Source: Mytilus californianus
Taxonomy: Eukaryota
Length of the DNA: 64,000 nt
Direction: 5' to 3'
Assembly: GCF_021869535.1 (NCBI RefSeq)
Contig: NW_026262701.1
Span: forward strand, 69,936,001-70,000,000
The position numbers were made by a program, and so were the translations under genes. Below are positions 34,082-54,748 of this stretch, piece by piece. Position 1 is the first letter of the stretch; every line of letters starts with the position of its first letter. The notes under the pieces were generated by a model, which was not told where the DNA came from, searched no databases, and saw nothing but the letters and a program-made list of their open reading frames with translations.

Positions 34082-34439
34082 ATTATTCTTTATAATTTAA
34101 TTCTAAATTCCATTTTTAAGGAGTAAATCATGAAAAAATGTTAATGACGTCACGGTCACATGACAAAATTATGTCTGAGCTGATAAACAAAAAACTTTCA
34201 GCGAATCAGAAGACGTGTTACATCCAAAATAAAACCATTAACCCTTAAACCTAAACCTAACTTAGAAAAATCCCTAATCTCACCCCAATCATAGATAAAC
34301 CCTATTCCTGAAGTATAGGGACTCATAAAGTGAAAGAAGGCCGTAGTTATTTTTTGTCATTAATCAATACACTGTATCCTTCTTTTCTATTGTGGTTAAA
34401 TGTCCGATTAAACTCTCCTGCCTGAGGTAATACGAACCC

Positions 34440-35171
34440 TGTCAGACAGACATATACACCTTTAAATCATCCCATACACCAAATAAAGTTGACATATTGC
34501 TTATGGTAACTGATAAACTAACATAACCACACAAACCTATTATTGGCCAATGAACCATGAAAATGAGGTCAAGGTCAAATGAAACCTGCCAGACAGACAT
34601 GTTAACCTTAGAATTATTCCATACACAAAATATACTGGAACTATTGATTATAGTGTCTGAGAAAAAGACCAAATCTTGAAAACTAAACATTGTCCAATGA
34701 ACCATGAAAATGAGGTTAAGGTAAGATGAAACCTGCCAGTACACCTTACAATCATTCCATACACCAAATATAGTTGACTTACTGCTCATAGTATCTGAGA
34801 TACGGACTTGACCACGTAACTGTAACCTTGATCACTGGTCCATAAAATGAGGTCCAGGTTTTGTGAACGTTACCTGACGGACATATAAACCTTGCAAGGA
34901 ACCCATACACCAAATATCATTATCCTATTACTCATAATAAGAGAGTATTCAACTTTTAAAATAGCAGTATTTCTTTTCAAGCATGAAAATAAGGTAAAGG
35001 ACAATGGACATATGACAGACGGAAACTTCGTATACAAGGTATGATGCATTCAAGTCTTCTAGCTCCTGAAATATAAAGCTTTATACAATTCGTTTACGCC
35101 GTCGCCGCCGCCTCCGGATTGTAATACCTTTGTCTCGCATACTGCGACTTTCGGCGCCGGCGAGACAAAAA
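34440..35171 (+). mobile_element. Helentron-associated/pearl-like non-autonomous element with internal tandem repeats; duplicated at about 45990-46718
   Basis: Repeats of ccatacaccaaatatagttgac...aatgaaccatgaaaatgaggtcaagg, then a GCC/GTC run, then a terminal tgtctcgc...gcgagacaaaaa hairpin. Confidence 0.7.
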
Positions 35172-35929
35172 CCGGGGATGAACTCAGGAAAAGACTAGCA
35201 ATAGGCCTCTGGACAATTTTTATAAAAAACTAGAAGTACTGCGAGCAGAGCGAACAATATTATACCCCCACCCCGGAAACCCCAAATTGATTCTGATAAA
35301 ATAAGAAAATAAGAGGTAACATTTATATGATTAAGATTGCGAGAAATTCAAATAAATTGTAATAAGGGTTTAAGAGGAGTTACGAATAAAAAATATAGGT
35401 AACCCCAAAATAAACAATGGCATGCTTTACTGAGGGAAACCCCAAGAATAATTCGGGCCCCATGCCACCCTCCCCCTTAAACCCCCCCCCCCCCCCCCCC
35501 CATCCCCCCCAAAAAAAAAACAATAAAAAAAACATTTAGAGAATGTACATGGCATTATATGGTTGAGTTTCTGCGAAAGTTTCATTTAATTTAGATTAGG
35601 GATTTAGGAGGAGAAGCGGATACACATGTTTACCATAGTATGCAGATATGATGGTAACTATAAGAAAAACACAAAATTTATTCAGATGATAAAATTAGAT
35701 AATAGGTACAGAAGTAAATACTGTCAGTAATATTTAGTCAAAGTTTCACAAAACTGAAAAAGAGCAGTTGCGGATACAAAACCGGGACAGAATGACGAAC
35801 GGACGAACAAACATACGGACGGACTCCTCAATCACTATAAAAGGCGGGTTATGATTAATGTACCATATACGAAAATGATGACACGTTGAAAATTGATCGT
35901 CACTACACCACAAAATAGGAATCCTAGGA

Positions 35930-36098
35930 AAACGTTGCGCTTGCGCTAATACCATTAATCGACGTCATTAACGTCTCTGCTGACAACGTTATCGTCGAAG
36001 TTTCGCCGATACATTGCACAAGGATAATTTTTGGAAGTCTAAAGAATTGATCCCGTGCAGCTTTTCCGAGGAAAGTAGAAATTGAAAGAGAAGTGTGG
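35930..36098 (+). promoter_or_regulatory. Candidate promoter and 5' non-coding exon of orphan gene copy 1 (copy 2 equivalent about 47455-47626)
   Basis: CpG-rich patch followed by a strong GTG|GTGAGT donor conserved in both duplicate copies; no ATG seen in the patch. Confidence 0.4.
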
Positions 36099-36699
36099 TG
36101 AGTTATTTTATTGCACTTTCTTCCAGTACTATGCTTTTTATTCTGTTTTCCATTTTAAAACCTACTAAGACAAAAAAAGAATACCCCATTTAAGGTAAAT
36201 TTGATTTTGTTTCATGGTCTTGAGCTGAGTTCTTTGTGTTAATGAGAAGTCGTTGAACGATTTCCTATCAAGACAATTGAATGTATCTTAAATTTGCTGA
36301 TAATCCTCTAGACTTCCATAGATTTTGTGATAAACAGCTAATATTAATATTTGTATTTTTACCGAAGTACTTTTGACCTTAAAATTTGAGTTTCTATAAC
36401 GCAGTAATCTCAAATAAAATGCATGTAGGTCATATTCAAACTTCTCTTATTCTGGTCGTTCTGGCTCTTTAAAGATTAGAAATCAGAAAAATAGATCTTA
36501 AGTTTCGATTACTCTTCAGAGTCAAGATTAAGTGTTTTTGAAAATAAAGGCAAATTAATATTAGATATGTATCAGTTTTTTTAATTCTGACTACAACTCC
36601 CGTGGTTCCGGCGCGTGTATGTCCTTTGAAAAGTTGAAAATGAGAAAACTTAAGATTTTGGATGGATACTTTTGATTACTTTGGATAGATAGTAATCTT

Positions 36700-37760
36700 T
36701 GGTGATCTCCCAGAAAGTCAAAGTAATCTTCAAAATCCAAGTCTTCTTTAAAAATCCTGTAATTTAGACATTTCGGGGAGTTCTGAATTTCTGCGAACCA
36801 TATTTGTTTATACTGATCAGTGAGTGTTTGTTTTATGCTTAATGTAAGCCACTTATGTTCATTCTGATAGTCGGAAGTATAAGTAAGTCCGCATTCGTTG
36901 AGAATTGAATGAACATGTGTTAGCCAGGGCAGATTATAACCGTTTTAAATTGTATAATGAAAATATGCTAGGTTATATATACTGGATGACAACTTCTCAC
37001 CTCTATTTACAAATTTACACCAGTATGACCTAATCCTTGTTTAAATAGATATACTTAATGGGCATCGCCCAGTTTCTCCATATACAATTGTTGATTGAAT
37101 TCTCCTTTGCATATTTAAAAGGTGTTTTAAAAATTTTGTACTTGTTCTATCACATCATACTTTCCGAATCCCTATACTTCACATTCATATAAAGGAATGG
37201 GTTTTACAATTTTGTCGAACAAATATCGATTTGACATTTTATTGAAAGATTGTACGTTCTACCTTTTTTACTCCGTACATAGTTTTTGTAGCCTTTTCAG
37301 CTAGATTGTTTAGCTTTATTAAATGACCCTGTTCTGTTATGAAGAAGTCCAAGGTATTTAAAATCTTTCATACTTCAATTTCTTTCCATCGAAATACAGT
37401 TTCGAATCGTTTGGTTGTCTTCCGTTGCCGAAGATCATTACTTCTGTTTTTGAGACATTCACTTTTAATTTCCACATTTTACAATATTCGCTAAAGCATT
37501 GGGGTTGCTTTCGGAGATCGGCTTTCGATTATGCCATGAAAACAGTATCATCTGTATATAGAATAACAAACAACTAAAAATATTTATACAGGTCTTTTTC
37601 AAACGTGATTGGAATGCTTTTGAGACCTTTAATACGTTTACAGGAGAAGAAGTTTATCATATCGTTGATATATACTAGTAAAGAAAATAACAATGGAGAT
37701 AGATTTTCCCCTTGTCGAACTCCAGTTTTGATGGAAAATTTGTTAATAAATGTATTGGTC
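36700..37760 (-). mobile_element. Degenerate LINE RT remnant in the intron upstream of the orphan gene's first coding exon; shortened copy at about 48300-48920
   Basis: Minus-strand fragments GVRQGENLSPLLFSL, YCKMWKLKVNVSKT, FKYLGLL and YGETGRCPL are separated by stops and frameshifts. Confidence 0.75.
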
Positions 37761-37979
37761 AATGAAAGTTTAAATGTTAACTTAAAGATGACAGCAAGGC
37801 TTGTAAATGTTTTGTTCTGTCCATTTATACTATACAATAACAGTCCTAAAAATACAAGTATAATATAAAGTTGCTCATGTAGATTCAATTTTTTAAAGGG
37901 GCATATAGGGGAGGGGTTACAACGGATTGTCATGATGCATTTTTCATTTTCACGTAACTCAACAGTCAACAGGATAAGT

Positions 37980-40900
37980 ATGGAGAGGACAGTCCAAGAA
38001 GAAAAAGAAAATCAGACAGTGGCTGGATTATGTGAAGCGATCCTTAGTGTTGCCGAATTTGAATTCACACTTGAACAGTGGGAAGTAGTCGAAGTAGACA
38101 TACGTGCAGCTGAGGATAGGGAAACCGCCTTGATAAAGGAATTAGGTATGTCCGTCAAATAATCCCCCCTCTTCCCTTTGTCCTAGCTTACACTTCTGAA
38201 TATAAAACAAATTCAAGATTGTCTCGTATGATCCCTTTGTACATTTATAGTCCACAACTAGTATTCCCATCAAATTAAAATGAATAAATGATAACCTTAT
38301 TTTTGGTAAAAGATATCGTTAATGATGCTATTGGTTATATAAGTAAGTGCTTTGAAGATAGTTTTGTATTTAGTGAAAATTGAGAAAAAATTATCAATGT
38401 GTATAAATGGGTCATTTCTCAGATAAAAAAAATCATTTTGATTCACTGTTTCTAAGCCTACATCTCTTCTATGTTATTGTTTGTTTCCTTTAAATCTTTG
38501 TATCTTTCAAATCAAATTTCATTATTGTTGTTTTCATTTCTTTTTCTGTTCTGCTCGGTGGATGAGTTATGCTCTTCATCACCTAATAAGTAATGTTACA
38601 TAGAGGCGTCGTGTATAGCAGGAACGAGACAGCAACCAAATGATATAAAACTTAAGACATATACATAGGTCAATAAACAGCTTTAATCAGAAGTCACACG
38701 TCCTTACAATATGTCAAGGTCAAAATCGCCTCGCGTCTTTACAAGTTGTAAATAAATTTACCAGATACTAATGTCTATTTCAGTTGTTAGGTTGTTGTCT
38801 CATTGCAATATACCTGATATCGGCTTAAACTACCAGCAACACCTCAATTCCTCAATGTTCAAGATCTTTAAGATATATACGTGTTTTTCCATTTAGACAA
38901 ATTAAAAGAGCAGGACACAACTAAAGAAGAAAATATAAAAGAAGAAGACAATGAGTTGACTTTCCAAGAAGACATTCAAAGTGTATCTGATGAATTGAAA
39001 GGCTTGGAGGAGGAAAAAGACGAAGCAGAACAACCGAAAGCGTCAATGAGAGTAGCAGGTAATAACGTTACTTCTTGAATTCCATCGCCACTTGTTTCTT
39101 TTACGAGTTTTAATTTTAACATCTTTTCTGTTTTTGTTTTATAGTTAAAATTATACTTTCTAAACAGTTATACCTAAATATTTCCTTGTTTTATGCTATT
39201 TACTCTGAACTGAACAGTAGCATATTGTCTGTACGTTCATTTAACAATAGCGAATATTATAAATTGTAAAGCAGATTTCGGTGTTGTAGTTGGAGATTAA
39301 GAGTTATCATCATCATTATTATTTGCTGGATCTGTATATCTTATGTTATCTCATCATTTTTTTTTTTGAATGATTACCGTCTCTTCGGAGACGGTCTTAT
39401 AAGTTGAACGATGGACAGTCTTCGGACTGAATGCTTTTTTACAACCTGATTGGAAGATATTACTGACTCTTTCATAGTAAAAGTCTGTTGATTGGTTGGG
39501 GCAATGTGAAACCTAGTAAATGTACTTTAATCCCGCAGAGTGTCGGGTTTGAACTCTTTATTTTAGTTATTAAAGTTGCATCGTGAGCAATCATGCATAT
39601 CGGTACACAGGAACATTATTCTATAAATAGCCGAAACTCGTCCAATTGCACATGTGATCAGTCCACATTTTATCCAGTCGCTCGTTGTTATGAACGTTCA
39701 GCAGAGTCATTAAAGTTGAAAACCTATTAAAACCTAGGGACACACCGCGCATGCTTTTTTTCCTCGGATATACATATTCGTTTGATATTAAGTAAGATAA
39801 TCCGACGGTAACAATTTAATTGAAAAACGGGTATAACCAAATCAATTAATTTCGATTAATATTGATCAATACGGGAATAATTTAGAGGAGTGTTTGCACT
39901 GGACTAGACAATGCCTAGCTATCTTACCGTGCCAAGATAGCAGAATGTGAAGAACACAAGACGAGGGGATAAAATAAGAAGAAAAAACGACTCTCAGACT
40001 ATAAAATTCGTAAGGGTTCCGCGGAACCCAGTGTCTCGCCTACTTTTGCTGTTAATCGCAGGCTCAACAAAAATGAGATGAGGAAAAAAATTAATAAAAA
40101 TATTCCCCTCGATACAATTTTTTTATTGTAAGAAGCTTCTGTCCAAGTTTGGTAAAAATCCAGGATAGTTTATGAATCTAATAAATGTTTTAAAAAATTT
40201 AACTGCAGACTGTATCTAATGTTAACTGGAAGAAAAACTAAGTCCATTTATAAGTAAAATATGGATAAACAAGTACAAAATTTTAATAAAAATTTCCTTC
40301 TAGATACTAGCTTTTGATCATAAACAAACTTCTGTCCATGTTTGGTACAAATCCAGGATAGTTTAAGAAAGTTATTAAAATTTTAAAAACTTTAACCACA
40401 GAGTGAATGTAATGTTCCCTGGCAGAAAAAAAAAACTTAGTCCATTTATAAGTAAAATACGGAAAAACAGGGATTTTTTTTTTAATTTACTTCTGGATAC
40501 TATCTTATGATCATAAACAAGCTTCTGTCCAAGTTTGGTAGAAATCCAGGATAGTTTGAGAAAGTTATTAAAATTTTAAAAACTTTAACCGCAGAGTGAA
40601 TGTAATGTTTCCTGGCAGAAAAACTAAGTCCATTTATAAGTAAAATACGGAAAAACAGGAATATGTTTTTACAAAATTTACTGCTGGATACTATCTTATG
40701 ATCATAAACAAGCTTCTGTCCAAGTTTGGTAGAATTCCAGGATAGTTTGAGAAAGTTATTAAAATTTTAAAAACTTTAACCACAGAGTGAATGTAATATT
40801 TCCTGGCAGAAAAACTAAGTCCATTTATAAGTAAAATACGGAAAAACAGGAATTTGATTTTTACAAAATTTACTTCTGGATACTATCTTATTATCATAAA

Positions 40901-43900
40901 CAAGATTCTGTCCAAGTTTGGTAGAAATCCAGGATAGTTTAAGAAAGTTATTAAAATTTCAAAAACTTTAACCACAGAGTGAATATTTGTAGACGCCGCC
41001 GCCGACGACGACGACGACGACGACGCCGACGCCGACGCCGACGGAATGTAGGATCGCTATGTCTCGCTTTTTCGACAAAAGTCGAAGGCTCGACAAAAAG
41101 CAATTATTTCATATTTGCCTTATTTTTCTCTCAATATCAAGTCCATCATGCGACAAAGTGAAACAGAACGAATTTGTTGAACGCTTCAAAAATTACGTTG
41201 GAATGAATACCTGAAAAGGCATCAAAAACAGATTTTGATGAAATTTTCCAAACGAAATTTAGGCTTGAATGGTATAAAGCATTGTATTCGACAAACTAAC
41301 TATTTTTTTCAGATATTTGATTTACTATAACATATATAATAAGCATTATGTTGCAAGATCTTTTTGTCGACGTGTGTGCTAGCGCTGTTTCTGGTTCTGA
41401 AAACGAATGGAATTCGCGGCCTGCTTTCTTTGTGTTTGCTGGGAAATTGAAATTAATGCTAAATGTGTCGTCAAAGAATGATATCTAATCTATTAATTGA
41501 TTTTAAAATGTTTCATTTTTATAACAGCCATCAATCAAAATTTGAATTTTAAGCTCGATATACTAGTAATATTTTGGCCTTGTCCAAATTACTCCTTTCA
41601 CTATAGCGTTAAAACGTTGATGAATTGATTTATCGAGACTATCGTGACCAGGGACCGGTACATTAACTTTATTTGGTCAATGCATAAGCTAAGTTTTTCT
41701 AGATCTCAACGCTTCTCGTTTTGAATGACAAAAAGCGGATAGAATATTGTTCAATATAAGTTTTAAGGATCATTTTGAAAAGATGTGAAAAATCTTTTGA
41801 AAAATCTTTGTGTGTTCTTTTGAGTTTAAATTTTACTACGTTTCAAACTCTTACACACTTTTCGAGACCTACTATAAATGCAACAGATACAGGCGGGAGT
41901 GGCCATACTTTTCTGACACAAAGAAATAAACAACTGATGTAGGAAGAAGTAAATGAATAACATATCTTTTTGAAAAAAAAAAAAAAATCGATAAACAGAT
42001 ACAAACGCAGATGATTTAGTAAATATCCCCCCTTTTTATCCCATCGAACTAGAGATAAAGGATACTACAGAAACAGTTAAGTCTGCCTCATATCTTGACC
42101 TGCATCTAGAAATTGATAATGAGGGTCAGTTGAAAACAAAACTTGAGACGGCTATTACTTGTAAAGACAATTCTGATCACAATATATAGTAATTGTTTGT
42201 AAGACCGATGTTATACTAATCAAGGTATTTTTATTTATTTTTTTTCATTTTCTAGGACAAACAGAAAAAATGGTGAAGAATGCAGGATATGTTTTTAAGG
42301 TACAATATAATATTGGTAAATTAGAACGGGGGGGGGGATGTTGATGACAGTTACAATCACATGATATACTGAGCTGAAATAATAATAGTTCAGTAGACAA
42401 AATTGCTTGTTTTGCTTTTCTTCATATGCATAGAACCGTCTCGGTGGTCTCGTGGTAGCGTGTTCGCCTCGAGATCGTGGGTTCGAACCCCAGCCGGGTC
42501 AAACAACAAACTTTAAAATTTGTATTTGCTGCTTATCCGCTAAACACGCGGCATTAAGGACTGAGAGCAAAGACTGGTCGGCTCGGAGTGAGAATAATGT
42601 GTCCGGGTAAGGTGACATGTCTTCCTGCGGACTGTTAACCTTGTGAACTAGCACGTCAAAAATCCAACTCAGTGTGTCGGTCTGGTACAAAGCAGGGTTA
42701 ATATTCACATACTATTAACATGTTCTCGTCCTAAATATGCATATTTATTAGTCGGGTTGTTGTCTCTTTGATACGTTCTCCATTTCCATTCTCAATTCTA
42801 TATATTATTTGCCGCTGGACGTGAATCAGCCATCCATCATCATCATTGTCATCATCATCATCATCATCATCATATGAACAGCAAATTGAAGGCTCCAAGC
42901 AACGAGCGAAAGAACATGCCCCTTACAACAAGCCAAAGGCTTTTCGATCTATCAAGTTTTGTCTGTCCTTAATATGCATAAATTATGTGCCACTGAACGT
43001 TAAGGAAACAACAATCAATCAATCAGTCATTCCAAGTTTTCGTTTGATTAAGGATGGTTTTCCCCTATTTGATCCGCAAGTTTTCTTTAGGAAAAAGTGA
43101 GTGTGGTCCTTGCTTCACAGAATTTATTCGTTAGCCGTTAATTGCACATTATTAAGATACCAAGCGTTTAGACAATTAAATGCTACTACATGTATTTGAT
43201 GAAAGATATTACAATGGTTGAATGATTGCTAGTTTTATTTGATAATGTCCAGCAGGAAATATTTCATAACTTGAGTGAAAAGCATTGGACAAAGCAGCAA
43301 CACGCCAATAAAAAGAAAAATACTACAACTTGAAAAATGTGTTGCCCAAGTTAGGGTAGATGGTATTTGTTTTCCCTAAACCAAAAAATATAGACTTCTA
43401 TTATAAAGTGCTAAAGAAACATGCCTCTAACAAATACAACCAATGGAACCTGTTATAGCTAGCGTCCTGAAGTAGCACATTTTTATCATGCTTTCCAAAT
43501 TATGTGCCGTCTTTTTGTTGTTCGTTCTTCTTTGTCTATGTTTGCAAGTTTATTGGTTTGGAGAAGGGAAGCGATGATAGTTGGTATTGTCTGTTGTTCT
43601 GTCTAATAAATTCGGTAATTCCTGTTTTATTTTTTCTTAATGTTTTATGAGATCTGTTTAAGAGATATTTTTCCCAAACAACAGTATATGTGAAAGAATA
43701 ACATGTTGTACTAAATATACGCGATGTGTCTTTTATAGGATACAATCCAGAACTCTGAACCCAATGGAATTATTAGCAAACAAACGAAAAGGGACTTAAA
43801 GAGGGAAAAAAGAAAAATGAAGAAAGAAGAGAAAATACGACAGAAAATAGATAAACAAGAGGAAAAGGTTGTTAAGTTGTACTTTAAGATGGTAGATAAG

Positions 43901-45340
43901 CTTATGATAAGGTACACAAAGGATGTCAAATTACAACGGAAGAAAGAAGATAAGAGGAGAAAGCAGATGGAAAAGATAGAGAGACAAGCTCAAAAGATGT
44001 TGGAGAAAGGTATTCATTTTAAATGACACTTTCGGGATTATTCGCATTAAACGATTACAAATGGACGCCTTTGACAGGACGAGCAATATTTTCTAATAAA
44101 TTTCAACCAAAACATACCAATGATGTATAAAACATCGTTAAAAACTCGAAATTTATATTTTTTTAATTAAACCAACATGTTTTAAATGTTAAAATGCGAA
44201 ATTTAATCATATATAACCTCATTATCGCAAGTTTCTAAAGCGTTGATTAAATTTACAACTGGTATGCTGAACATCCGGGCTTCTTATGGAAATATTTGAT
44301 ATATTGTATTTTTTCTACTACGCACTAATAAAACTTTAAAAAAACGAACAACCAAAGGACATTCAATTGTTAAAAGTCCGGATGCTTGTCCAGTTGCTCC
44401 TGACTGACGCTTTTCGTGCAATATATTTTTTAAAAACATTCTTTAAATTACAACTAATTTAAGTTTATCAAACATAGAAAGTAAAACGGGATTAAAAAAC
44501 TGATACCAAGTTAATAAGCAACACGACAGGTGCCACATGTGGAGTAGGATCTGCTTACCCTTCCGGAGCACCTGAGATCACCCCCAGCTTTTGGTGGCGT
44601 TCGTGTTGCTTAGTCTTTAGTTTTCTATGTTGTGTCATCTGTACTATTATTTGTCTGTTTGTCTTTTTATTTTTGGCCATGGCGTTGTCAGTTTGTTTTC
44701 GATCTATGAGTTTGACTGTCCCTCTGGTATCTTTCGTCCCTCTTTTTTAATACTGAAATATATGTTGAATGCAATAAAAACATTTTCGACCTTTGGTCTT
44801 TAATCAATGAAAAGTTAAATCGAAAAAATACTGAACTCCGAGGAAAATTTAAAACGGAAAGTCCCTAATCAAATGGCAATATCAAAAGCACAAACACATC
44901 AAACGAATGGACAATAAGTGTCTCGTTGAACATAAAAACACTTCTCCTTATTTTTATGTTATGATTTTAAAACTTCATGAACGTATTTGATTTTAACACT
45001 TGCGTTTACAGAAATGAAGAGGATGGAGAAAGAAGGTGTAAAAAATGAAAAGAAGAAAAAGTCCCTAACTACGGTTGTAAAGGAAAAACACATTGATTTA
45101 AAGAAAAGCAAAACAAAGAGAGAGACAGAGAATAATAAGGGTCATGAGAAGAAAGAGGCAGAGAAAAACGTAGATGGAAAGAAAAAAGAGTGCCAAACTA
45201 TGGATATTAAGCCGGAAAACATTGATAAAATGGGTACCACCAATGACGGAAAGAAAAACACAATAACAGCAAGCATTCGCTCATTTTTTCGAATCTTTTC
45301 TTGTAACAGACGACAGAAAAAGAATAAAGCTGTAGTTTGA
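37980..45340 (+). CDS. Uncharacterised acidic/basic coiled-coil-like protein, copy 1 (323 aa); exons 37980-38145, 38897-39058, 42256-42299, 43739-44009, 45012-45340
   Basis: Five exons with canonical AG/GT sites join in frame (phases 1,1,0,1) into a 972-nt ORF with no internal stop. The same structure is retained in copy 2. No family recognised. Confidence 0.8.
40011..41101 (+). mobile_element. Helentron-associated/pearl-like element with about 4.5 tandem units of about 192 bp, a (GCC/GAC)n tract and a terminal hairpin; present in copy 1 only
   Basis: Repeat phase marker (g/a)gatac at about 40306, 40500, 40691 and 40883. Microsatellite at about 40993-41042. gtgtctcgcc near the 5' end and tgtctcgc-ttttcgac-aaaa-gtcgaa near the 3' end. 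Confidence 0.8.
42037..42144 (+). mobile_element. Short Penelope-like RT fragment
   Basis: Encodes YPIELEIKDTTETVKSASYLDLHLEIDNEGQLKTKL, almost identical to the 23230-23664 ORF. Absent from duplication copy 2. Confidence 0.85.
42435..42745 (+). mobile_element. tRNA-derived SINE (Meta/MESC-like central domain, tentative)
   Basis: A-box-like ggtggtctcgtggtag and B-box gggttcgaacccc with shortened spacing, followed by gctgcttatccgctaaacacgcggcattaagg. Confidence 0.75.
44517..44746 (+). mobile_element. 230-bp 3'-end copy of the Penelope-like element with TTAATA target-site duplication; copy 1 only
   Basis: Reverse complement of about 22936-23150. TTAATA occurs at 44511-44516 and 44747-44752. 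The empty site in copy 2 is at about 53235-53245. Confidence 0.9.
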
Positions 45341-48300
45341 TAAATCTTTTTTTGTATTATATTAAATTTTCTATATTTTTTATCACTGTGTTTATATTCT
45401 ATTTTCTGATGGAAAAGTCAAAATTGAATTTGGTATAAGAGACGACACGAATGGACCTGCCTCACGTAAAATGAGAGTCGTCCGGAATGAAATTCAACTT
45501 CGATCTCTTAGTCTCAATTAAATACAAATAGATAAGAAAAAAGTCATCAGCTACAGACAAAACGAAAAGAGAGGCCTAAGAAGTACTTTTTTCAAATAAT
45601 TTTTATAAATCCAAGAACTTTAATTTTGTGACAAAGTAGGTCATCCGAAACACGAACTCGACGTGTACCTCACCATCATACACGTACCAAACAAAATATA
45701 GCAATAAGATGTGGTATGGTTGCTACCAAAACAACTAGTCACAGAGACCAAAAGACATGGCTGTATACCATTTAAGGGCTCTGTACGGCTTCAACAATGA
45801 TCAAAACCCATACCGTATAGTAAGCTCTAGAGGTTCCGACATGATATTCAATCGCGAAAACTATAGACCTGATGTATGCTAAAGTAACAGACAGAATTAT
45901 TTTTTGTCATTAATCAATACACTGTATCCTTCTTCTCTATTATGGTTAAATGTCCGATTAAACTCTCCTGCCTGAGGTAATACGAACCCTGTCAGACAGA
46001 CATATACACCTTTAAATCATCCCATACACCAAATATAGTTGACATATTGCTTATGGTAACTGATAAACTAACATAACCACACAAACCTATCATTGGCCAA
46101 TGAACCATGAAAATGAGGTCAAGGTCAAATGAAACCTGCCAGACAGACATGTTAACCTTAGAATTATTCCACACACAAAATATACTGGAACTATTAAATT
46201 GATTATAGTATCCGAGAAATAGACCGAAACATGAAAACTAAACATTGTCCAATGAACCATGAAAATGAGGTCAAGGTCAGATGAAACCTGCGAGTACACC
46301 TTACAATCATTCCATACACCAAATATAGTTGACTTACTGCTTATAGTATCTGAGATACGGACTTGACCACGTAACTGTAACCTTGATCACTGGTCCATAA
46401 AATGAGGTCAAGGTTTTGTGAACGTTACCTGACGGACATATAAACCTTACAAGGAACCCATACACCAAATATCATTATCCTATTACTCATAATAAGAGAG
46501 TATTCCACTTTTAAAATAGCAGTATTTGTTTTCAAGCATGAAAAAATAAGGTAAAGGACAATGGACATATGACAGACGGAAACTTCGTATACAAGGTATG
46601 AAGCATCCAGGTCTTCAAGCTCCTGAAATATACAATTAGTTTACGCCGTCGTCGCCGCTACCGGATTGTAATACCTATGTCTCGCATACTCCGACTTTCG
46701 GCGCCGGCGAGACAAAAACCGGGGATGAACTCAGGAAAAGACTAACAATAGGCCTCGGGACAATTTTTATAAAAAACTAGAAGTACTGCGAGCAGAGCTA
46801 ACAAAATAATACCCCCACCCCGGAAACCCCAAATTGATTCTGATGAAACAAGAAAATAAGAGGTAACATTTATATGATAAAGATTGCGAGAAATTCAAAT
46901 AAATTGTAATAAGGGTTTGAGAGGAGTTACGAATAAAAAAAATTGGTAACCCTAAAATAAACAATGGTAAGATCCATGCTTTACTGAGGGAAACCCCAAG
47001 AATAATTCGGACCCAATGCCCCCCTCCCCCCTAAATCAACCCCCCCCCCAAAAAAAAAACATTAAGAGAATGTGCATGGCATTATATGGTTGAGTTTCTG
47101 CGAAAGTTTCATTTAATTTAGATTAGGGGTTTAGGAGGAGAAGCGGATACAAATGTTTACCATAGTATGCAGATATGATGTTAACTATAAGAAAAACACA
47201 AAATTTATTCAGATGATAAAATTAGATAATAGGTACAGAAGTAAATAATGTCAGTAATATTTAGTCAAAGTTTCACAAAACTGAAAAAGAGCAGATGCGG
47301 ATACAAAACCGGGACAGAATGACGAACGGACAAACAAACATACGGACGGACTCCTCAATCACTATAAAAGGCGGGTTATGATTAATGTACCATATACGAA
47401 AATGATGACACGTTGAAAATTGATCGTCACTACACCACAAAATAGAAATCCTAGAAAAATGTTGCGCTTGCGCTAATACCATTAATCAACGTCATAAACG
47501 TCTCTGCTGACAACGTTATCGTCGAAGTTTCGCCGATACATTGCACAAGGATATTTTTTGGAAGTCTAAAGAATTGATCCCGTGCAGCTTTTCTGAGGAA
47601 AGTAGAAATTGAAAGAGGAGTGTGGTGAGTTATTTTATTGCACTTTCTTCAAGTACTATGCCTTTTATTCTGTTTTCCATTTTAAAACCTACTAAGACAA
47701 AAAAAGAATACCACATTTAATGCAAATTTGATTTTGAGGCCTTCAGCATCTGCAAGTAAATGTAAGTCTTCTGTTTCATGGTCTTGAGCTGAGTTCGTTG
47801 TGTTAATGAGAAGTCGTTGTACGATTTCCTATCAAGACAATTGAATGTATCTTAAATTTGCTGATAATCCTCTAGACTTCCATAGATTTTGTGATAAACA
47901 GCTAATATTAATATTTGTATTTTTGCCGAAGTACTTTTGACCTTAAAATTTGAGTTTCTATAACGCAGTAGTCTCAGATAAAGTGCATGTAGGTCAAATT
48001 CAAACTTCTCTTATTCTGGTCGTTCTGGCTCTTTAAAGATTAGAAATCAGAAAAATAGATCTTAAGTTTCGATTACTCTTCAGAGTCAAGATTAAGTGTT
48101 TTTGAAAATAATGGCAAATTAATATTAGATATGTTTCAGTTTTGGATTCTGACTACAACTCCCGTAGTTCCGGCGTGTGTATGTCCTTTGAAAAGTTGGA
48201 AATTAGAAAACTTCGATTTTGGATGGATACTTTTGATTACTTTGGATAGATAGTAATCTTCGGTGATCTCCCAGAAAATCAAAGTAATCTTCAAAATCCA

Positions 48301-49148
48301 AGTCTTCTTTAAAAATCCTGTAGTTTAGACATTTCGGGGAGTTCTGAATTTCTGAGTACCATACTTGTTTATACTGATCAGTGAGTGTTTGTTTTATGCT
48401 TAATGTAAGCCACTTATGTTCATTCTGAAGGTCGGAAGTATAAGTAAGTCCGCATTTGCTGAGAATTGAATGAACATGTGTTATCCAAGGCAGATTTTAA
48501 CCGTTTGTTGTATAATGTAAAAATATGCCAGGTTATATATACTGGATGACAACGTCTCACCTCCATTTACAAATTTACACCAGTATGAACTAAGCCTTGT
48601 TTAAATAGATATACTTAATAGGCATCGCCCAGTTTCTCCATATACAATTGTTGATTGAATTCTCCTGTGCATATTTAAAAGGTGTTTTAAAAATTTTGTA
48701 CTTGTTCTATCACATCATACTTTCCGAATCCCCATACTTCACATCCATATATTTATACAGGTCTTTTTCAAACGTGATTGGAATGCTATCGAGACCTTTA
48801 ATACGTTTACAGGAGAAGAAGTCTATCATATCGTTGATATATACTAGTAAAGAAAATAACAAGGGAGATAGATTTTCCCCTTGTCTAACTCCAGTTGTAC
48901 ATGGAAATTTTTTTAATAAATGTATTGGTAAATGAATGTTTTAATATTAACTTAAAGATGACAGCAATGCGTGTAAATTTTTTGTTCTGTCCATTTATAC
49001 TATACAATAACAGTCCTAAAAATACAAGTATAATATAAAGTTGCTCATGTAGATTCAATTTTTTAAAGCGGCATATAGGGAAGGGGTTACAACGGATTTC
49101 ATAATGCATTTTTCGTTTTCATTTAACCCAACAATCAACAGGATAAGT

Positions 49149-52100
49149 ATGGAGAGGACAGTCCAAGAAGAAAAAGAAAATCAGACAGTGGCTGGATTAT
49201 GTGAAGCGATCCTTAGTGTTGCCGAGTTTGAATTCACACTTGAACAGTGGGAAGTAGTCGAAGTAGACATACGTGCAGCTGAGGATAGGGAAACCGACTT
49301 GATAAAGGAATTAGGTATGTCCGTCAAATAATCCCCCATCCCCCGTTGTCCTAGCTTACACTTCTGAATATAAAACAAATTCAAGATTGTCTCTTATGAT
49401 CATTTTGTACATTTATAGTCCACTTCTACCCTTAAACTATATGAATAAATGATAACCTTATTTTTGGTAAAAGATATCGTTAATGATGCTATTGGTTATA
49501 TAACTAAGTGCTTTGTAGATAGTTTTGTATTTTAAATTAGTCAAAATTGAGAAAAAAATATCAATGTGTATAAATGGGTCATTTCTCAGATAAAAAAAAA
49601 TCATTTTGATTCACTGTTTCTAAGCCTACATCTTTTCTATGTTATTGTTTGCTTCCTTTAAATCTTTGCATCTTTCAAATCAAATTTCATTATTGTTGTT
49701 TTCATTTCTTTTCCTGTTCTGCTCGGTGGATGAGTTATGCTCTTCATCACCTAATAAGTAATGTTACATACAGGCTTCGTGTATAGCAGGAACGAGACAG
49801 CAACCAAATGATATAAAACCTAAGACATATACATAGGTCAATAAACAGCCTTAATCGGTAGACACATGTCCTTACAATATGTCAAGGTCAAAATCGCCTC
49901 GCGTCTATACAAGTTGTAAATAAATTTACCACATACTTTTTGTTTATTTCAATTGTTAGGTTGTTGTCTCATTGCCATATACCTGATATCGACTGAAACT
50001 ACCAGCAAAAATTAATTCCTCAATGTTCAATGTCTTTTAAGATATATACGTGTTTCTCCATTTAGACAAATTAAAAGAACAGGGCACAACCGAAGAAAAA
50101 AATATAAAAGGAGAAGACAATGATTTGACACTCCAAGAAGACATTCAAAGTGTATCTGATGAATCGAAAGACTTGGAGGAGAAAATAGACGCAGCAGAAC
50201 AACCGGAAGCATCAATGAGAGCAGCAGGTAATAACGTTACTTCTTGAAATCCATTGCCGCTTGTTTCTTTTACGAGTTTTAATTCTGGACTACTTGTCTG
50301 TTTTTGTTTTATAGTTAAAATTATACTTTCTAAACAGTTATACCTAAATATTTCCTTGTTTTATGCTATTTACTCTGAACTGAACAGTAGCATATTGTCT
50401 GTTCGTTCATTTAACAATAGCGAATATTATAAATTGTAAAGCAGATTTCGGTGTTGTAGTTGGAGATTAAGAGTTATCATCATCATTATTATTTGGTGGA
50501 TCTGTATATCTTGTGTTATCTCATCATTTTTTTGAATGATTACCGTATCCCTGGAGAGGGTCTTATAAGTTGAACGATGGACAGTCTTCAGACTGAATGC
50601 CTTTTTACTACCTGATTGGAAGATATTACTGACTCTTTCATAATTAAAGTCTGTTGATTGGTTGGGGCAATTTGAAACCTAGTAAATGTACTTTAATCCC
50701 ACAGAGTGTCGGTACACAGGAACATTATTCTATAAATAGCCGAAACTCCTGCAATTGCACATGTGATCATTCCATATTTTATCCAGTCGGCCATACTTTT
50801 CTGACACAAAGAAATAAACAACTGATGTAGGAAGAAGTAAATGAATAACATATCTTCTTGAAAAAAAACTAATCGATAAACAGATACAAACGCAGATGAT
50901 TAAGTAAATATATCCCCCCTTTTTTCGGTGTTTATACATAATGTATGTATAAACACTGAAAAAAGGGGGGATATTTTACTAAATCATCTGCGTACGATTA
51001 GTTTTTTCATTCTCCCACAGGCATTTGTCTTTGAAAAAATATCATATATGTTATATTAAGGTATATATGGAAAAAATCAGAGACAAGTGCCTGTTATTCC
51101 CCACCAAAAAAAAAGGAAAATCTCAAAATTAGTATTTGCCGTTTATTTTTTGTAATTATTCACTTTACAATGCTGTTCTGCACGGAAAACATTTTTTAGA
51201 AAAGCTATTACTTGTAAAGACAAATCCGATCACAATATATAGTGATTGATTGTAAGATAGATGTTATACTAATCCAGGTATTTTATTTATTTTTTTCATT
51301 TTCTAGGACAAACAGAAAAAACGCTGAAGAATGCCGGATATGTTTTTAAGGTACAATATAATATTGGTAAATTAGAACGGGGGGAAATGTTTATGACAGT
51401 CACAACCACTTGATATACTGAGAATTAATAATAGTTCAGTAGACACAATTGCTTGTTTTGTTTTTCTTCATATGCACAGAACCGTCTCGGTGATCTCGTG
51501 GTAGCGTGTTGGCCTCGAGATCGTGGGTTCGAACCCCGGCCGGGTCAAACAATTAAAATTTGTATTTACTGCTTATCCGCTAAACACGCGGCATTACGGA
51601 CAGAGAGCAAAGACTGGTCGGCTCGGAGTGAGAATAATGTGTCCGCGTAAGGTGACATGTCTTCCTGCGGACTGTTAACCTTGTGAACTAGCACGTCAAA
51701 ATACCGACTCAGTCTGTCGGTCTAGTACAAAGCAGGGTTAATATTCACATACTATTAACATGTTCTCGTCCTAAATATGCATATTTATTGGTCGGGTTGT
51801 TGTCTCTTTGACACATTCCCCATTTCCATTCTCAATTTTATATATTATTTGCCGCTGGACGTTAATCAGCCATCCATCATCATTATCGTCATCATCATCA
51901 TCATATGAACAGCAAATTGAAGGCTCCAAGCAACGAGCGAAAGAACATGCCCCTTACAACAAGCCAAAGGCTTTTCGATCTATCAAGTTTTGTCTGTCCT
52001 TAATATGCATAAATTATGTGCCACTGAACGTTAAGAAAACAACAATCAATCAATCAGTCATTCCAAGTTTTCGTTTGATTGTGGATGGTTTTCCCCTATT

Positions 52101-53842
52101 TGATCCGCAAGTTTTCTTAAGGAAAAAGTGAGTGTGGTCACACAGAATTTATTCGTTATACGTTAATTGCACATTATTAAAATACCAAGCGTTTAGACTT
52201 TTAAATGCTACTACATGTATTTGATGAAAGATATTACAATGGTTGATTGATTGCTAGTTTTATTTGATAATGTCCAGCAGGAAATATTTCATAACTTGAG
52301 TGAAGAGCATTGGACAAAGCAGCAACACGCCAATAAAAAGAAAAATACTACAACTTTTATTAGTGTTTTATGAGATATGTTTTAGAGATATTTTTTCCCA
52401 AACCACAGTTTATGTGAAAGAATAACATGTTGTACTACATATACGATGTGTATTTTTATAGGATACAATCCAGAACTCTGAACTCAATGGAGCTATTAGC
52501 AAACAAACGAAAAGGGACTTAAAGAGGGAAAAAAGAAAAACGAAGAAAGAAGAGAAAATACGACAGAAAATAGCTGAACAAGAGGAAAAGGTTGTTAAGT
52601 TGTACTTTAAGATGGTAGATAAGCTTATGATAAGGTACACAAAGGATGTCAAATTACAACGGAAGAAAGAAGTTAAGAGGAGAAAGCAGATGGAAAAGAT
52701 AGAGAGACAAGCTCAAAAGATGTTGGAGAAAGGTATTCATTTTAAATGACACTTTCGGGATTATTCGCATTAAACGATTACAAATGGACGCCTTTGACAG
52801 GACGAGCAATATTTTCTAATAAATTTCAATTAAAACATACCAATGATGTATAAAACATCGTACAAACTCGAAATTTATAATTTTTTAATTAAACTAACAT
52901 TTTTCACATATTAAAATGCGAAATTTAATCATATATAACCTCATCATCGCAAGTTTTTAAAGCGTTGATTAAATTTACAACTGGTATGCTGAATATCCGG
53001 GCTTCTTATGGAAATATTTGATATGTTGTATTTTTTCTATTACACACTAATAAAACTTTAAAAAAAAGAACAACAAAAAGACATTCAATTGTTAAAAGTC
53101 CGGTTGCTTGTCCAGTTGCTCCTGACGCTGACGCTTTTCGTGCAATATATTTTTTAAAAACATTCTTTAAATTACAGCTAATTTAAGTTTATCAAACATA
53201 GATAATAAAACGAGATAAAATAACTGATACGAAGTTAATACTGAAATATAAATACTTTTATAAATTTTGACTTAGATGGAGAGTTGTCTCATTGGCACTC
53301 ATACCACATCTTCTTATATCTATCTATGAATACAATCAAAACATTTTTGATCTTTGGTCTTTAATCAATAAGTGTCTCGTTGAACATAAAAACACTTCTC
53401 CTTATTTGTATGATATGATTTTAAAACTTCATGAACGTATTTGATTTTTACACTTGCGTTTACAGAAATGAAGAGGATGGAGAAAGAAGGTGTAAAAAAT
53501 GAAAAGAAGAAAAAGGCCCTAACTACGGTTGTAAAGGAAAAACACATTGATTTAAAGAAAAGCAAAACAAAGAGAGAGACAGAGAATAATAAGAGTCATG
53601 AGAAGAAAGAGGCACAAACTATAGAAGCTATAGAGGCCAAACAAAATGGTATGACGAAAAGCAAAACAAAGAAAGAGGCAGAGAAAAACGTAGATGGAAA
53701 GAATAAAGAGAGCCAAACAATGGATATTATGAAGGAAAACATTGATAAAATGGGTACCACCAATGACAGAAAGAAAAACACAATAACAGCAAGCATTCGC
53801 TCATGTTTTAGAATCTTTTCTTGTAACAGACGACAGCTGTAG
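49149..53842 (+). CDS. Uncharacterised acidic/basic coiled-coil-like protein, copy 2 (339 aa); exons 49149-49314, 50066-50227, 51307-51350, 52462-52732, 53466-53842
   Basis: Exon lengths 166/162/44/271/377 join in frame to 1020 nt, with the same splice sites as copy 1. Confidence 0.8.
51481..51780 (+). mobile_element. Duplicated copy of the tRNA-derived SINE
   Basis: Colinear with 42435-42745 and shares the shortened A-B box spacing. Confidence 0.75.
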
Positions 53843-54537
53843 TTTGATAAATCGTTTTTTGTATTATATTAAATTTTCTATATTTTTTATCACTGTTTTT
53901 ATATTCTATTTTCTGATGGAAAAGTCAAAATGGAATTTGGTATAAGGGACGACACGAATGGACCTACCTCACGTAAAATGAGAGTCGTCCGGAACGAAAT
54001 ACAAGTTCGATCTCTTAGTCTCAACTAAATACAAATAAATAAAAAAAAACTTCAAAAAAGTCATTAGCTAGAGGCAAAACAAAAAGAGAGGCCCAACAAG
54101 TACTTTTTTCATGTAAATTTTATAAATCAAAGAGCTTTAATTTTGTGACAAAGTAGGTCATCCGAAACACGAACTCGTCTTGTACCGCACCATCATACAC
54201 GTACCAAAAAAATATAGAAATAAGATGTGGTATGTTTGCTAACAAAACAACTAGCCACAGAGACCAAAAGACGTGGATGTATGCAATTATAGGGCACTGT
54301 ACGGCTTCAACAATGATCAAAACCCATACCGTATAGAAAGCTCTAGAGGTTCCGACATGACATATTCAATCGCGAAAACCATAGAACTGATGTATGCTAA
54401 AGTAACAGACACAATACTAATATGACAGACAACAACTAAAGATCACCACTTACTGAAAGGCTCCCGACTTTGGACAGGCACATAAAGAATGTGGCAGGGC
54501 TCAACATTGTTTGCAAGTTATAAACAAAACCTTAACT

Positions 54538-54748
54538 GAGGCCGGGTCTGGATGGGGGTCCTTCATTTTTATATTCTTTATTTTCTTAGGCCATTTTTCT
54601 CTATTCTTTATACTTTTTGCTCATTATTCTCTATTCTTTATATGTAAGCACCTCATTATTCTCTATTCTTTATTTTTTAGTTCATTTTTCTCTTTTCTTT
54701 ATATTTTTGCCAATTATTCTCTATTCTGTAAACCCCGTCCACACCCTC
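54538..54748. mobile_element. MITE-like element related to 4223-4422, nested in a family B-type repeat
   Basis: gag..gggtctggatggggg and accccgtccacaccctc ends; internal ttattctctattcttt repeats. Confidence 0.6.

What the first reader, a model, noticed from the sequence alone, without database searches (positions are those of the whole stretch)
37980..53842. Tandem pair of a hidden five-exon orphan gene, both copies with open frames
The ORF track shows only fragments, but five exons per copy splice in phase into proteins of 323 and 339 aa. Each has a hydrophobic/acidic N-terminal module (LCEAILSVAEFEFTLEQWEVVEVD), an acidic linker, a Lys/Arg/Glu-rich helical region and an amphipathic tail (ASIRSFFRIFSC). 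Splice sites and frame survive in both copies despite many intronic indels. I recognise no family, so this is the best candidate here for an undescribed lineage-specific gene family. The charge-segregated layout suggests nucleic acid, membrane or mineral binding; that is speculation.
Basis: partly seen in the sequence, partly recalled or inferred. Interest (0 to 1): 0.7.

Follow-up and report, generated by a model that had tools for sequence, protein, structure and literature searches.

The report
Unannotated mussel-only charged-protein gene pair
The window holds two tandem, still-open copies of a gene family found only in Mytilus mussels. The family encodes a highly charged, mostly helical protein of unknown function and is already in public databases under misleading automatic names, and these two copies look unexpressed and unconstrained.

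Summary
Five GT/AG-bounded exons per copy splice in phase into open frames of exactly 323 aa (copy A, 37980-45340) and 339 aa (copy B, 49149-53842). They lie in an exact two-unit tandem duplication (34347-45897 and 45897-54415, about 95% identical).

The genome is Mytilus californianus. The gene belongs to a real family:
- At least 14 loci on six large contigs, several of them broken.
- The same five-coding-exon structure in RefSeq models of other Mytilus species.
- A conserved non-coding exon 0 and promoter block found only at family loci.
- ORF retention far beyond chance (P about 0.00025) and dN/dS of 0.42-0.48 against a neutral baseline of 0.8.

No Pfam or PDB relative exists. A profile search of 1.84 billion proteins found only Mytilus proteins and two unlabelled fragments.

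The family is not undescribed sequence. Paralogues and orthologues are deposited as "cylicin-1-like", "DNA ligase 1-like", "trichohyalin-like" or "uncharacterized".

The two window copies are absent from the protein sets searched. They gave no reads in the one RNA run laid on copy B. Since duplicating they have evolved at the neutral ratio. Copy B has lost a family-invariant Phe and the conserved C-terminal end.

Function is unknown. The product is an intracellular polyampholyte: acidic N-terminus, long basic helix, disordered Lys-rich linker and a Cys-bearing amphipathic tail.

The parts
34347..45897 (+). Tandem duplication unit A (11.55 kb)
   Evidence: Self-BLAST: 34347-36209, 36205-37191, 37580-39546, 41898-42037, 42151-43331, 43632-44516, 44912-45160 and 45149-45897 align colinearly to unit B at 90-98% identity.
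45897..54415 (+). Tandem duplication unit B (8.5 kb). It is shorter because unit A carries extra insertions, for example 39680-41898 and 37191-37580.
35935..36097 (+). Copy A: conserved promoter block plus non-coding exon 0. CRE-like CGACGTCAT at 35960. Donor G|GTGAGT at 36098. The 5' end (transcription start) is not determined.
   Evidence: alignment of 11 paralogues. motif positions; the element occurs only at family loci.
37973..38145 (+). Copy A exon 1. Acceptor AACAG| lies 7 nt before the ATG at 37980. Encodes the acidic N-terminal helix with the LCEAILSVAEFEF motif. Donor AG|GTATGT.
38897..39058 (+). Copy A exon 2 (162 nt, acidic linker)
42256..42299 (+). Copy A exon 3 (44-nt microexon, peptide GQTEKMVKNAGYVFK)
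   Evidence: Conserved in paralogues and present in RefSeq proteins of other Mytilus species.
43739..44009 (+). Copy A exon 4 (271 nt, the most conserved part, basic amphipathic helix)
45012..45340 (+). Copy A exon 5 (Lys-rich disordered region plus tail ASIRSFFRIFSCNRRQKKNKAVV, stop at 45338-45340). It has a 48-nt in-frame deletion relative to B and the C110 paralogue.
47462..47624 (+). Copy B: conserved promoter block plus non-coding exon 0. The CRE-like core is mutated to CAACGTCAT at 47487-47495. Donor G|GTGAGT at 47625.
49142..49314 (+). Copy B exon 1 (ATG at 49149)
50066..50227 (+). Copy B exon 2. An alternative in-frame donor lies 8 nt downstream (AAC|GTTACT); if used, it would skip exon 3.
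51307..51350 (+). Copy B exon 3 (44-nt microexon, peptide GQTEKTLKNAGYVFK)
52462..52732 (+). Copy B exon 4
53466..53842 (+). Copy B exon 5. It carries F328C at a family-invariant Phe. A 13-nt deletion replaces the conserved C-terminal KKNKAVV with L. Stop at 53840-53842.

Best explanation
The stretch holds two young tandem paralogues (about 5% diverged) of a protein-coding gene family restricted to Mytilus. The window comes from Mytilus californianus.

Gene structure (shown): each copy has six exons. A non-coding exon 0 sits behind a family-specific promoter block containing a CRE-like CGACGTCA motif. Five coding exons follow. The gene structure matches RefSeq models of the family in sister species.

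Protein features:
- No signal peptide (seen by eye from the N-terminal sequence).
- About 45% charged residues.
- An acidic N-terminal region of about 110 aa (net charge -19 or -20) with a conserved hydrophobic-faced helix ((F/L)CEAIL..A.FE).
- A helix of about 100 residues, confidently predicted, basic and amphipathic, encoded by exon 4 and the start of exon 5.
- A disordered Lys-rich linker.
- A conserved basic amphipathic tail, GKKNTF.A.I..FFR.(L/F)SC.K.Q, in which I311, F314 and C320 are invariant.

Family evolution (shown): at least 14 loci evolving by birth and death, with many broken copies. Purifying selection on the protein is weak but real.

Mechanism (inferred): the protein is an intracellular scaffold. 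The basic helix, linker and tail would bind a polyanionic surface such as nucleic acid or acidic membrane. The acidic N-terminal module would bind a partner or fold back on the basic half.

Status of the two window copies (shown only as absence of evidence): they are unannotated, gave no RNA reads in the single run laid, and have evolved at the neutral ratio since duplicating. Copy B has begun to lose conserved tail features. Copy A is the better candidate for a working gene. Copy B may be an early pseudogene.
For: - Model and frames.
- Tandem duplication.
- Paralogues: searches give 14 loci carrying exon 4. Splice sites are conserved across them.
- The C110 paralogue is intact at 343 aa. It equals XP_052103647.1, apart from the microexon, on a contig of 126,941,415 bp, the same length as C110.
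- Distant paralogues align only at exons E1, E4 and E5 and at the upstream block, apart from dispersed short repeats; unique intron sequence does not align.
- The upstream block has 11 genome hits, all at family loci.
- Neutral simulation: P(no stop) = 0.00025. Observed NG86 dN/dS is 0.42-0.48, against a neutral median of 0.80 and a 2.5th percentile of 0.52. The second subfamily gives 0.41-0.61.
- RefSeq proteins of M. trossulus and M. galloprovincialis (337-341 aa) contain all five coding exons, including the microexon.
- Only Mytilus sources carry a name among the hits.
- No Pfam or PDB relatives.
- AlphaFold2 with the family alignment: helices at 2-25, 32-70, 83-108 and 122-226 (pLDDT 85-93 over 130-210), disorder at 227-305, tail helix at 307-316.
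- Charge blocks.
Against: - No expression evidence for the window copies. RNA run X4 (about 10.3 million reads, 6% of the run, tissue unknown) gave zero reads on exons 1, 2, 4 and 5 of copy B. It covered only high-copy repeats.
- Neither copy appears among the proteins retrieved for this species.
- Exon and intron substitution divergence are nearly equal: A-B 4.75% vs 5.13%, B vs the C110 copy 11.0% vs 12.35%.
- A-B dN/dS is 0.81, which equals the neutral baseline. Lineage-polarised changes are A 10 nonsynonymous to 3 synonymous and B 11 to 2, close to the neutral expectation of 4.5:1.
- Copy B has F328C at an invariant Phe, a frameshifting 13-nt deletion at its end, and a G-to-A change in the CRE-like core.
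- The functional proposal rests on composition and predicted helices only. Hydrophobic periodicity is 3.6-4.0 rather than 3.5, so a canonical coiled coil is not supported.
Confidence: 0.7

Rival explanations
1. Both window copies are transcriptionally silent, recently dead duplicates (unprocessed pseudogenes) whose frames have simply not yet been hit. Only other family loci, such as the C110 copy, are functional.
For: - Zero RNA reads on copy B exons.
- Absent from the proteins retrieved for this species, while the C110 paralogue is present.
- A-B dN/dS of 0.81 equals the neutral baseline, and lineage-specific nonsynonymous:synonymous counts are neutral in both copies.
- Copy B has tail lesions and a mutated CRE-like core.
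- Most loci of this subfamily are visibly broken.
Against: - P(no stop in either copy) is only about 0.035 under neutrality at A-B divergence.
- Intron indel density (7.5 per kb) predicts several frameshifts in 1 kb of exon. Only one is seen, at the last codons of B.
- On the tree, XP_052103647.1 pairs with an M. coruscus protein (92/90), while its fork with the A+B pair is unresolved. This hints, weakly, that the A/B lineage has kept an open frame since about the split of M. californianus and M. coruscus.
- One RNA run of unknown tissue, read at 6%, cannot show that a gene is silent.
Confidence: 0.4
2. The unit is cargo of a mobile element (a captured or element-borne ORF), which would explain the dispersed copies of about 7.5 kb that share introns and flanks.
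For: - Paralogues on C110, C99 and C24 align to copy B across introns and about 2 kb of upstream sequence at 80-87% identity. Their 3' ends of homology cluster near 54420-54540.
- Repeats and an insertion with an RT-like ORF lie inside the unit.
Against: - The 5' ends of homology differ between copies: 47039, 47107, 47346, 47452 and 48015.
- Copy number is about 14, not hundreds.
- No transposase or RT domain was detected in the coding exons.
- Older paralogues keep only the exons and promoter, as ordinary duplicated genes do.
- I did not search for terminal repeats or target-site duplications.
Confidence: 0.05
3. It is a diverged member of a known family, as the database names suggest (cylicin, trichohyalin, DNA ligase 1 N-terminus, NOP58 tail).
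For: Automatic names of the homologues. Lys/Glu-rich composition.
Against: - No Pfam family at E <= 0.01 in any of 18 members, and none at E <= 1 beyond noise for single exons.
- No PDB sequence match at E <= 1.
- A profile search returns only Mytilus proteins and two unlabelled fragments.
- The conserved motifs (FCEAIL, ENPLKNA.G, the tail FFR.LSC.K.Q) are specific to this family.
Confidence: 0.03
4. The frames are chance open frames in AT-rich, purine-rich DNA, and there is no gene.
For: None beyond the lack of RNA reads.
Against: -: splice sites, reading frames and motifs are conserved in paralogues as low as 40-55% amino-acid identity and in four other species.
- P(no stop) = 0.00025 under neutrality.
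Confidence: 0.01

Closest known systems
XP_052103647.1 "cylicin-1-like" of Mytilus californianus (P0001; locus C110:94.620-94.624 Mb = L009)
   Same: - Same genome and same exon structure.
- 69-74% amino-acid identity to copies A and B over the full length.
- Same N-terminal motif, exon 4 helix and tail.
- Same upstream promoter and exon 0 block.
   Different: - It lies on another chromosome-scale contig.
- The RefSeq model skips the 44-nt microexon by using a weaker donor 8 nt downstream (GAC|GTAGTT).
- It keeps the full tail ...FFRIFSCIKRQEKDKAVV, which copy B has damaged.
- It is annotated as a protein, whereas A and B were not found in the protein sets.
RefSeq and UniProt proteins of M. 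trossulus ("DNA ligase 1-like", P0020 and P0021), M. galloprovincialis (LOC143081946, P0022) and M. edulis ("nucleolar protein 58-like", P0003)
   Same: - 337-387 aa with the same order of modules.
- The microexon peptide (GPTEKTLKNARYVFK) is included.
- 48-60% identity to A and B.
- They fall in the same starred clade of the family tree.
   Different: - Different species.
- M. edulis members carry an extra acidic repeat insertion.
- The names are composition artefacts: no ligase or NOP domain is present.
Second subfamily (M. coruscus P0030, M. edulis "DNA ligase 1-like" P0002; own-genome loci C110:87.95 Mb and 92.13-92.14 Mb)
   Same: Same exon 1, exon 4 and tail motifs and the same upstream block. 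37-43% identity to A and B.
   Different: - Exon 2 and the linker differ, with an extra ISCD.IEKNE segment.
- It appears better conserved between species. By eye, the open exons of the own-genome locus L014 match M. coruscus P0030 almost exactly (1 difference in about 52 aa of exon 1 and 5 in about 91 aa of exon 4). I did not compute this alignment.
Mammalian cylicins and trichohyalin (Lys/Glu-rich cytoskeletal proteins)
   Same: High Lys/Glu content and predicted long charged helices. This is a resemblance in composition only (my own knowledge).
   Different: No detectable sequence homology. No KKD or ER repeat units. The family-specific N-terminal and C-terminal motifs are absent from those proteins.

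Membership tests
Mytilus-restricted uncharacterised charged-helix family (XP_052103647.1 and relatives) | Significant full-length sequence similarity to deposited members | tested here: met
   Local BLASTP of the spliced A and B models against the retrieved proteins: E = 1e-153 and 3e-168 to P0001, and 1e-125 to 1e-139 to P0020-22. The exon 4 profile hits 12 proteins, with a best E of 3e-37.
Mytilus-restricted uncharacterised charged-helix family (XP_052103647.1 and relatives) | Shared gene structure: five coding exons with phases 1, 1, 0, 1, including a 44-nt microexon, plus non-coding exon 0 | tested here: met
   Splice sites are conserved in own-genome paralogues. The microexon peptide is present in most aligned family proteins (about 15 of 18).
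Mytilus-restricted uncharacterised charged-helix family (XP_052103647.1 and relatives) | Conserved motifs: (F/L)CEAIL..A.FE near the N-terminus, the exon 4 helix KEEK.R.K.AKEEEK...KDVK...KRRK..., and a tail with invariant I, F and C | tested here: met
   Copy A has all of them. Copy B has all except the invariant Phe (F328C) and the terminal K.K.VV.
Mytilus-restricted uncharacterised charged-helix family (XP_052103647.1 and relatives) | Transcribed and spliced | tested here: inconclusive
   Zero reads on copy B exons in one RNA run read at 6%.
Cylicin (sperm-head cytoskeleton) | Match to the Pfam or sequence family models for cylicin | tested here: not met
   No Pfam family at E <= 0.01 in any of 18 members. 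Exon-level scans returned only noise.
DNA ligase 1 / NOP58 / trichohyalin | Presence of the catalytic or defining domains (ligase adenylation and OB fold, Nop domain, S100/EF-hand plus repeats) | tested here: not met
   No Pfam hits. No PDB sequence hit at E <= 1.
Canonical coiled-coil protein | Heptad (3.5-residue) hydrophobic periodicity in the long helix | tested here: not met
   The power spectrum peaks at 3.6 and 4.0. Period 3.5 is no better than shuffled sequence (p = 0.54). This was a crude test; no dedicated coiled-coil predictor was available.

The most novel reading that the evidence does not exclude
The family is a Mytilus-born, fast-evolving set of block-polyampholyte helical proteins. 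It would be driven by its own CRE-type promoter and expressed only in a narrow context, for example male germ line or larval stages. It would turn over by birth and death, and possibly by presence/absence between individuals. Copies A and B would then be live, lineage-specific members missed by annotation because the tissue was never sampled.
Probability: 0.2. Interest if true: 0.45.

Novelty: new member of a known kind. Interest (0 to 1): 0.3.

Why it matters
Mussel genomes are full of taxonomically restricted, copy-number-variable genes whose biology is unknown. This case gives such a family a clean definition: exon structure, conserved motifs, its own promoter and exon 0 block, at least 14 loci, and a Mytilus-only distribution.

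It also shows that the names in public databases ("cylicin-1-like", "DNA ligase 1-like", "nucleolar protein 58-like", "trichohyalin-like") are composition artefacts. They should not be carried into enrichment or expression studies.

It adds two structurally intact, apparently unannotated loci in M. californianus. Beyond that it is an ordinary example of birth-and-death evolution, and no function is established.

Tried and rejected
- RNA support: one run search and one read-laying run were allowed. I laid RNA run X4, two DNA-contig runs and one run of unknown type (guessed RNA) on 48400-54390, which covers copy B only. There were no exon reads. The only joint reported (51840 to 52528, 21-nt side, 11 foreign letters between) comes from a high-copy repeat and is not a splice.
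- Word-index protein searches with exon 5 and with the exon 4 alignment found nothing within the allowed length range. This says little, because the true proteins are 2.5-4 times longer than a single exon.
- The joined (spliced) protein was never sent to any search tool. It was built and used only inside local scripts. External searches used single exons by reference, or proteins returned by the tools.
I therefore could not read the loci or CDS of other species' members, and could not check whether the two Logan-derived proteins come from transcripts. Their sequences read from exon 4 into the intron (…LEKGSYMNCF…), so they look genomic.
- Pfam on exons and on 18 family members, and PDB sequence search: nothing.
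- ESM Atlas: no feature hits, and only long-helix structural look-alikes with TM below 0.5.
- I did not run a fold search on the AlphaFold2 model. The mean pLDDT is 58.7 and the only confident element is one long helix, so any matches would be meaningless.
- Literature: searches for "cylicin" with "Mytilus", for six accession numbers, and for "cylicin" with "mussel" found no relevant paper.
- An AKAP-type RII-binding helix in the N-terminal motif was considered by eye and rejected, because the consensus spacing does not fit.
- The RT-like ORF on the minus strand just upstream of exon 1 (37577-37969) gave no Pfam hit at E <= 0.01.
- Earlier-findings look-ups added nothing.
Full report
**1. What is there**

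The ORF list for 37000-55000 shows matching ORF fragments in two places. A self-comparison of the window shows an exact two-unit tandem duplication. Unit A is 34347-45897 and unit B is 45897-54415. They are colinear and 90-98% identical, with most blocks at 93-95% and introns and flanks included.

I read the ORF ends and their flanks and scanned for an in-phase small exon.

| Exon | Copy A | Copy B |
|---|---|---|
| E1 | 37980-38145 | 49149-49314 |
| E2 | 38897-39058 | 50066-50227 |
| E3 | 42256-42299 | 51307-51350 |
| E4 | 43739-44009 | 52462-52732 |
| E5 | 45012-45340 | 53466-53842 |
| Total | 972 nt, 323 aa plus stop | 1020 nt, 339 aa plus stop |

Phases are 1, 1, 0, 1 and every intron is GT..AG. 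The joined models were built only inside local scripts from window.fa. They were never sent to a search tool. External searches used single exons by reference, or proteins returned by the tools.

**2. A family, not a pair**

The window is G000:C121:69936001-70000000 of a 1.65-Gb genome. Exon-wise searches of that genome found homologous exons at many places. An exon 4 profile finds 14 loci on C121, C110, C99, C24, C35 and C154. I fetched twelve stretches.

In the closer paralogues (84-93% DNA identity in exons) every splice site is conserved, including those of the 44-nt microexon.

State of the individual loci:
- C110:94.620 Mb has an intact 343-aa frame.
- C110:94.32 Mb lacks an alignable exon 2 and has a stop in exon 5.
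- C110:69.265 Mb has stops and frameshifts.
- C24:14.68 Mb has stops in exon 4 and a 10-nt deficit in exon 1.
- C110:69.18 Mb and C110:69.216 Mb have stops.
- C110:94.631 Mb has lost exons 3 and 4.
- C99:22.38 Mb is 5'-truncated.

This is birth-and-death evolution.

**3. An upstream exon and promoter**

In the distant paralogues (40-60% amino-acid identity), unique intron sequence no longer aligns. What still aligns, apart from dispersed short repeats, is exons 1, 4 and 5 and one upstream block at B 47450-47690.

An alignment of that block from 11 loci shows strongly conserved motifs (consensus ...TCGACGTCATAAACATCTCCGATGACAACGTTATCGTCGAAGTATCGCCGATAC...). The block ends in a conserved splice donor, G|GTGAGT or G|GTAAGT, after which conservation collapses. 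It contains no ATG.

An AG acceptor 7-13 nt upstream of the start codon is conserved in all paralogues. The block has only 11 hits in the whole genome, all at family loci.

I read this as the family's own promoter, with a CRE-like GACGTCA core, followed by a non-coding exon 0. This is inferred from conservation and was not shown by reads. In copy B the CRE-like core is changed to AACGTCA.

**4. Is the coding frame maintained by selection?**

- Substitution divergence is almost the same in exons and introns: A-B 4.75% vs 5.13%, and B vs the C110 copy 11.0% vs 12.35%. Constraint is therefore weak.
- Nei-Gojobori (NG86) dN/dS is 0.81 for A-B, and 0.42 and 0.48 for A and B against the C110 copy.
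- This Lys/Glu-rich coding sequence biases the estimator, so I simulated neutral evolution of the CDS with the intron-derived substitution spectrum. The neutral NG86 ratio has a median of 0.80 and a 2.5th percentile of 0.52.
- At the divergence from the C110 copy, 7.9 stops are expected and P(no stop) = 0.00025. At A-B divergence, 3.4 stops are expected and P = 0.035.
- Paralogues of a second subfamily give 0.41-0.61.

The family is therefore under real but weak purifying selection. Since the A/B duplication no constraint is detectable. Polarised with the C110 copy, A has 10 nonsynonymous and 3 synonymous changes and B has 11 and 2, against a neutral expectation of about 4.5:1.

Copy B also carries F328C at a Phe that is invariant in 18 family proteins. 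A 13-nt deletion replaces the conserved C-terminal KKNKAVV with L. Copy A has a 48-nt in-frame deletion in the disordered linker.

**5. Relatives elsewhere**

- Pfam finds nothing in the exons.
- Word-index searches with exon 5 and with the exon 4 alignment found nothing within the permitted length range.
- A HMMER search of 1.84 billion representative proteins with the exon 4 profile gave 12 hits. All that carry a source name are from Mytilus: M. californianus, M. edulis, M. galloprovincialis, M. coruscus and M. trossulus. The two others are unlabelled Logan ORFs, which read into the intron and so look genomic.
- The best hit, XP_052103647.1 "cylicin-1-like" (331 aa), lies on a contig of 126,941,415 bp. 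That is exactly the length of C110, and it equals my model of the C110:94.62 Mb paralogue. This identifies the genome as M. californianus.
- That RefSeq model skips the microexon by using a weaker donor 8 nt downstream. The same alternative donor exists in A and B and would also stay in frame.
- A word search with this protein returned 17 proteins, all Mytilus. They are named "DNA ligase 1-like", "nucleolar protein 58-like", "trichohyalin-like", "glutamic acid-rich protein-like" or "uncharacterized". XP_052103647.1 is the only one from M. californianus. Copies A and B are therefore not in these protein sets.
- RefSeq proteins of M. trossulus and M. galloprovincialis (337-341 aa) contain all five coding exons, including the microexon peptide.
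- None of 18 family members has a Pfam domain, and the family profile hits no PDB chain.
- A tree places A+B as a pair (100/99) in a subfamily with XP_052103647.1. That protein pairs with an M. coruscus protein (92/90).

**6. Expression**

Only one run search and one read-laying run were allowed. On 48400-54390 (copy B), RNA run X4 (paired Illumina, about 10.3 million reads, 6% of the run, tissue not stated) gave zero reads on exons 1, 2, 4 and 5. It gave reads only on two high-copy short repeats, at 51600-52000 and 53200-53400. The single RNA "joint" (51840 to 52528) has a 21-nt side and foreign letters between the two sides, so it is a repeat artefact.

DNA-contig runs of organism A and of a second organism cover the whole stretch.

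**7. The protein and how it may work**

- Composition: 44-46% charged residues. The first 110 or so residues have a net charge of -19 to -20, and the rest about +32. There is no N-terminal hydrophobic signal (by eye).
- AlphaFold2 with the 18-sequence family alignment (mean pLDDT 58.7) predicts helices at 2-25, 32-70 and 83-108. It predicts one long helix at 122-226, with pLDDT 85-93 over residues 130-210. Residues 227-305 are disordered, and there is a short tail helix at 307-316.
- The hydrophobic periodicity of the long helix is 3.6-4.0, not 3.5. It is therefore an amphipathic helix, and a canonical coiled coil is not supported.
- The family-wide conserved elements are the N-terminal (F/L)CEAIL..A.FE helix, the microexon peptide ENPLKNA.G, the exon 4 helix, and the tail GKKNTF.A.I..FFR.(L/F)SC.K.Q, in which I311, F314 and C320 are invariant.
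- Short family members (140-169 aa) keep only exon 4 and the tail, which suggests these form the core.

My best guess is inference only. The protein is an intracellular scaffold. Its basic helix, linker and tail bind a polyanionic surface such as nucleic acid or acidic membrane, and the Cys-bearing amphipathic tail acts as an anchor. The acidic N-terminal module binds a partner or masks the basic half.

**8. Verdict**

This is a lineage-restricted, domain-less family. But it is not undescribed sequence, it is much larger than a pair, and the two copies in the window show no sign of expression or of constraint since they duplicated. Copy B is beginning to decay. This is a tidy example of a taxonomically restricted mussel gene family, of moderate to low surprise.

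Noticed in passing
window 51788-51841 and 53253-53323: Two short elements (54 nt and 71 nt) with enormous depth in the DNA-contig runs (summed word depth up to about 2.7 million) and in the RNA run. They also occur in several orientations in the fetched paralogue loci. They look like MITE-like or SINE-like high-copy repeats inside introns 3 and 4 of copy B.
   Followed up: partly
window 40133-40984: A 193-bp tandem array (4.4 copies, 88% matches) inside intron 2 of copy A only. It is followed at about 40985-41050 by a GC-rich trinucleotide run that reads as poly-Arg or poly-Asp ORFs. It is part of the insertion of about 2.2 kb (39680-41898) that is absent from copy B.
   Followed up: partly
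window 34425-34860 and 45975-46470: Diverged tandem repeats of about 147 bp (74-77% identity) lie at the 5' start of each duplication unit, next to the A/B junction at 45897. They may have mediated the tandem duplication.
   Followed up: no
window 48244-48915 (copy B) and 37191-37970 (copy A), minus strand: An insertion in intron 0, absent from the C110, C99 and C24 paralogues. It carries a minus-strand ORF with a reverse-transcriptase-like motif by eye (…GVRQGENLSPLLFSL…). Pfam gave no hit at E <= 0.01.
   Followed up: partly
L009:3731-3740 (C110:94.62 Mb); window 50228-50236 and 39059-39067: The RefSeq model XP_052103647.1 joins exon 2 to exon 4 through a weak donor 8 nt downstream of the strong CAG|GTAATG donor, skipping the 44-nt microexon in frame. 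The same alternative donor is present in both window copies. It could be real alternative splicing or an annotation artefact.
   Followed up: partly
L009 and L010 (C110:94,618,001-94,635,000): The C110 paralogue also sits in a tandem pair about 10.5 kb apart. The second copy has lost exons 3 and 4 and the start of exon 5.
   Followed up: partly
window 54572-54727: A 29-bp tandem repeat (5.2 copies) just downstream of the end of duplication unit B.
   Followed up: no
window 24609-25580: An earlier first-stage note on this window lists a Snail/Scratch-like zinc-finger ORF here. I did not examine it.
   Followed up: no
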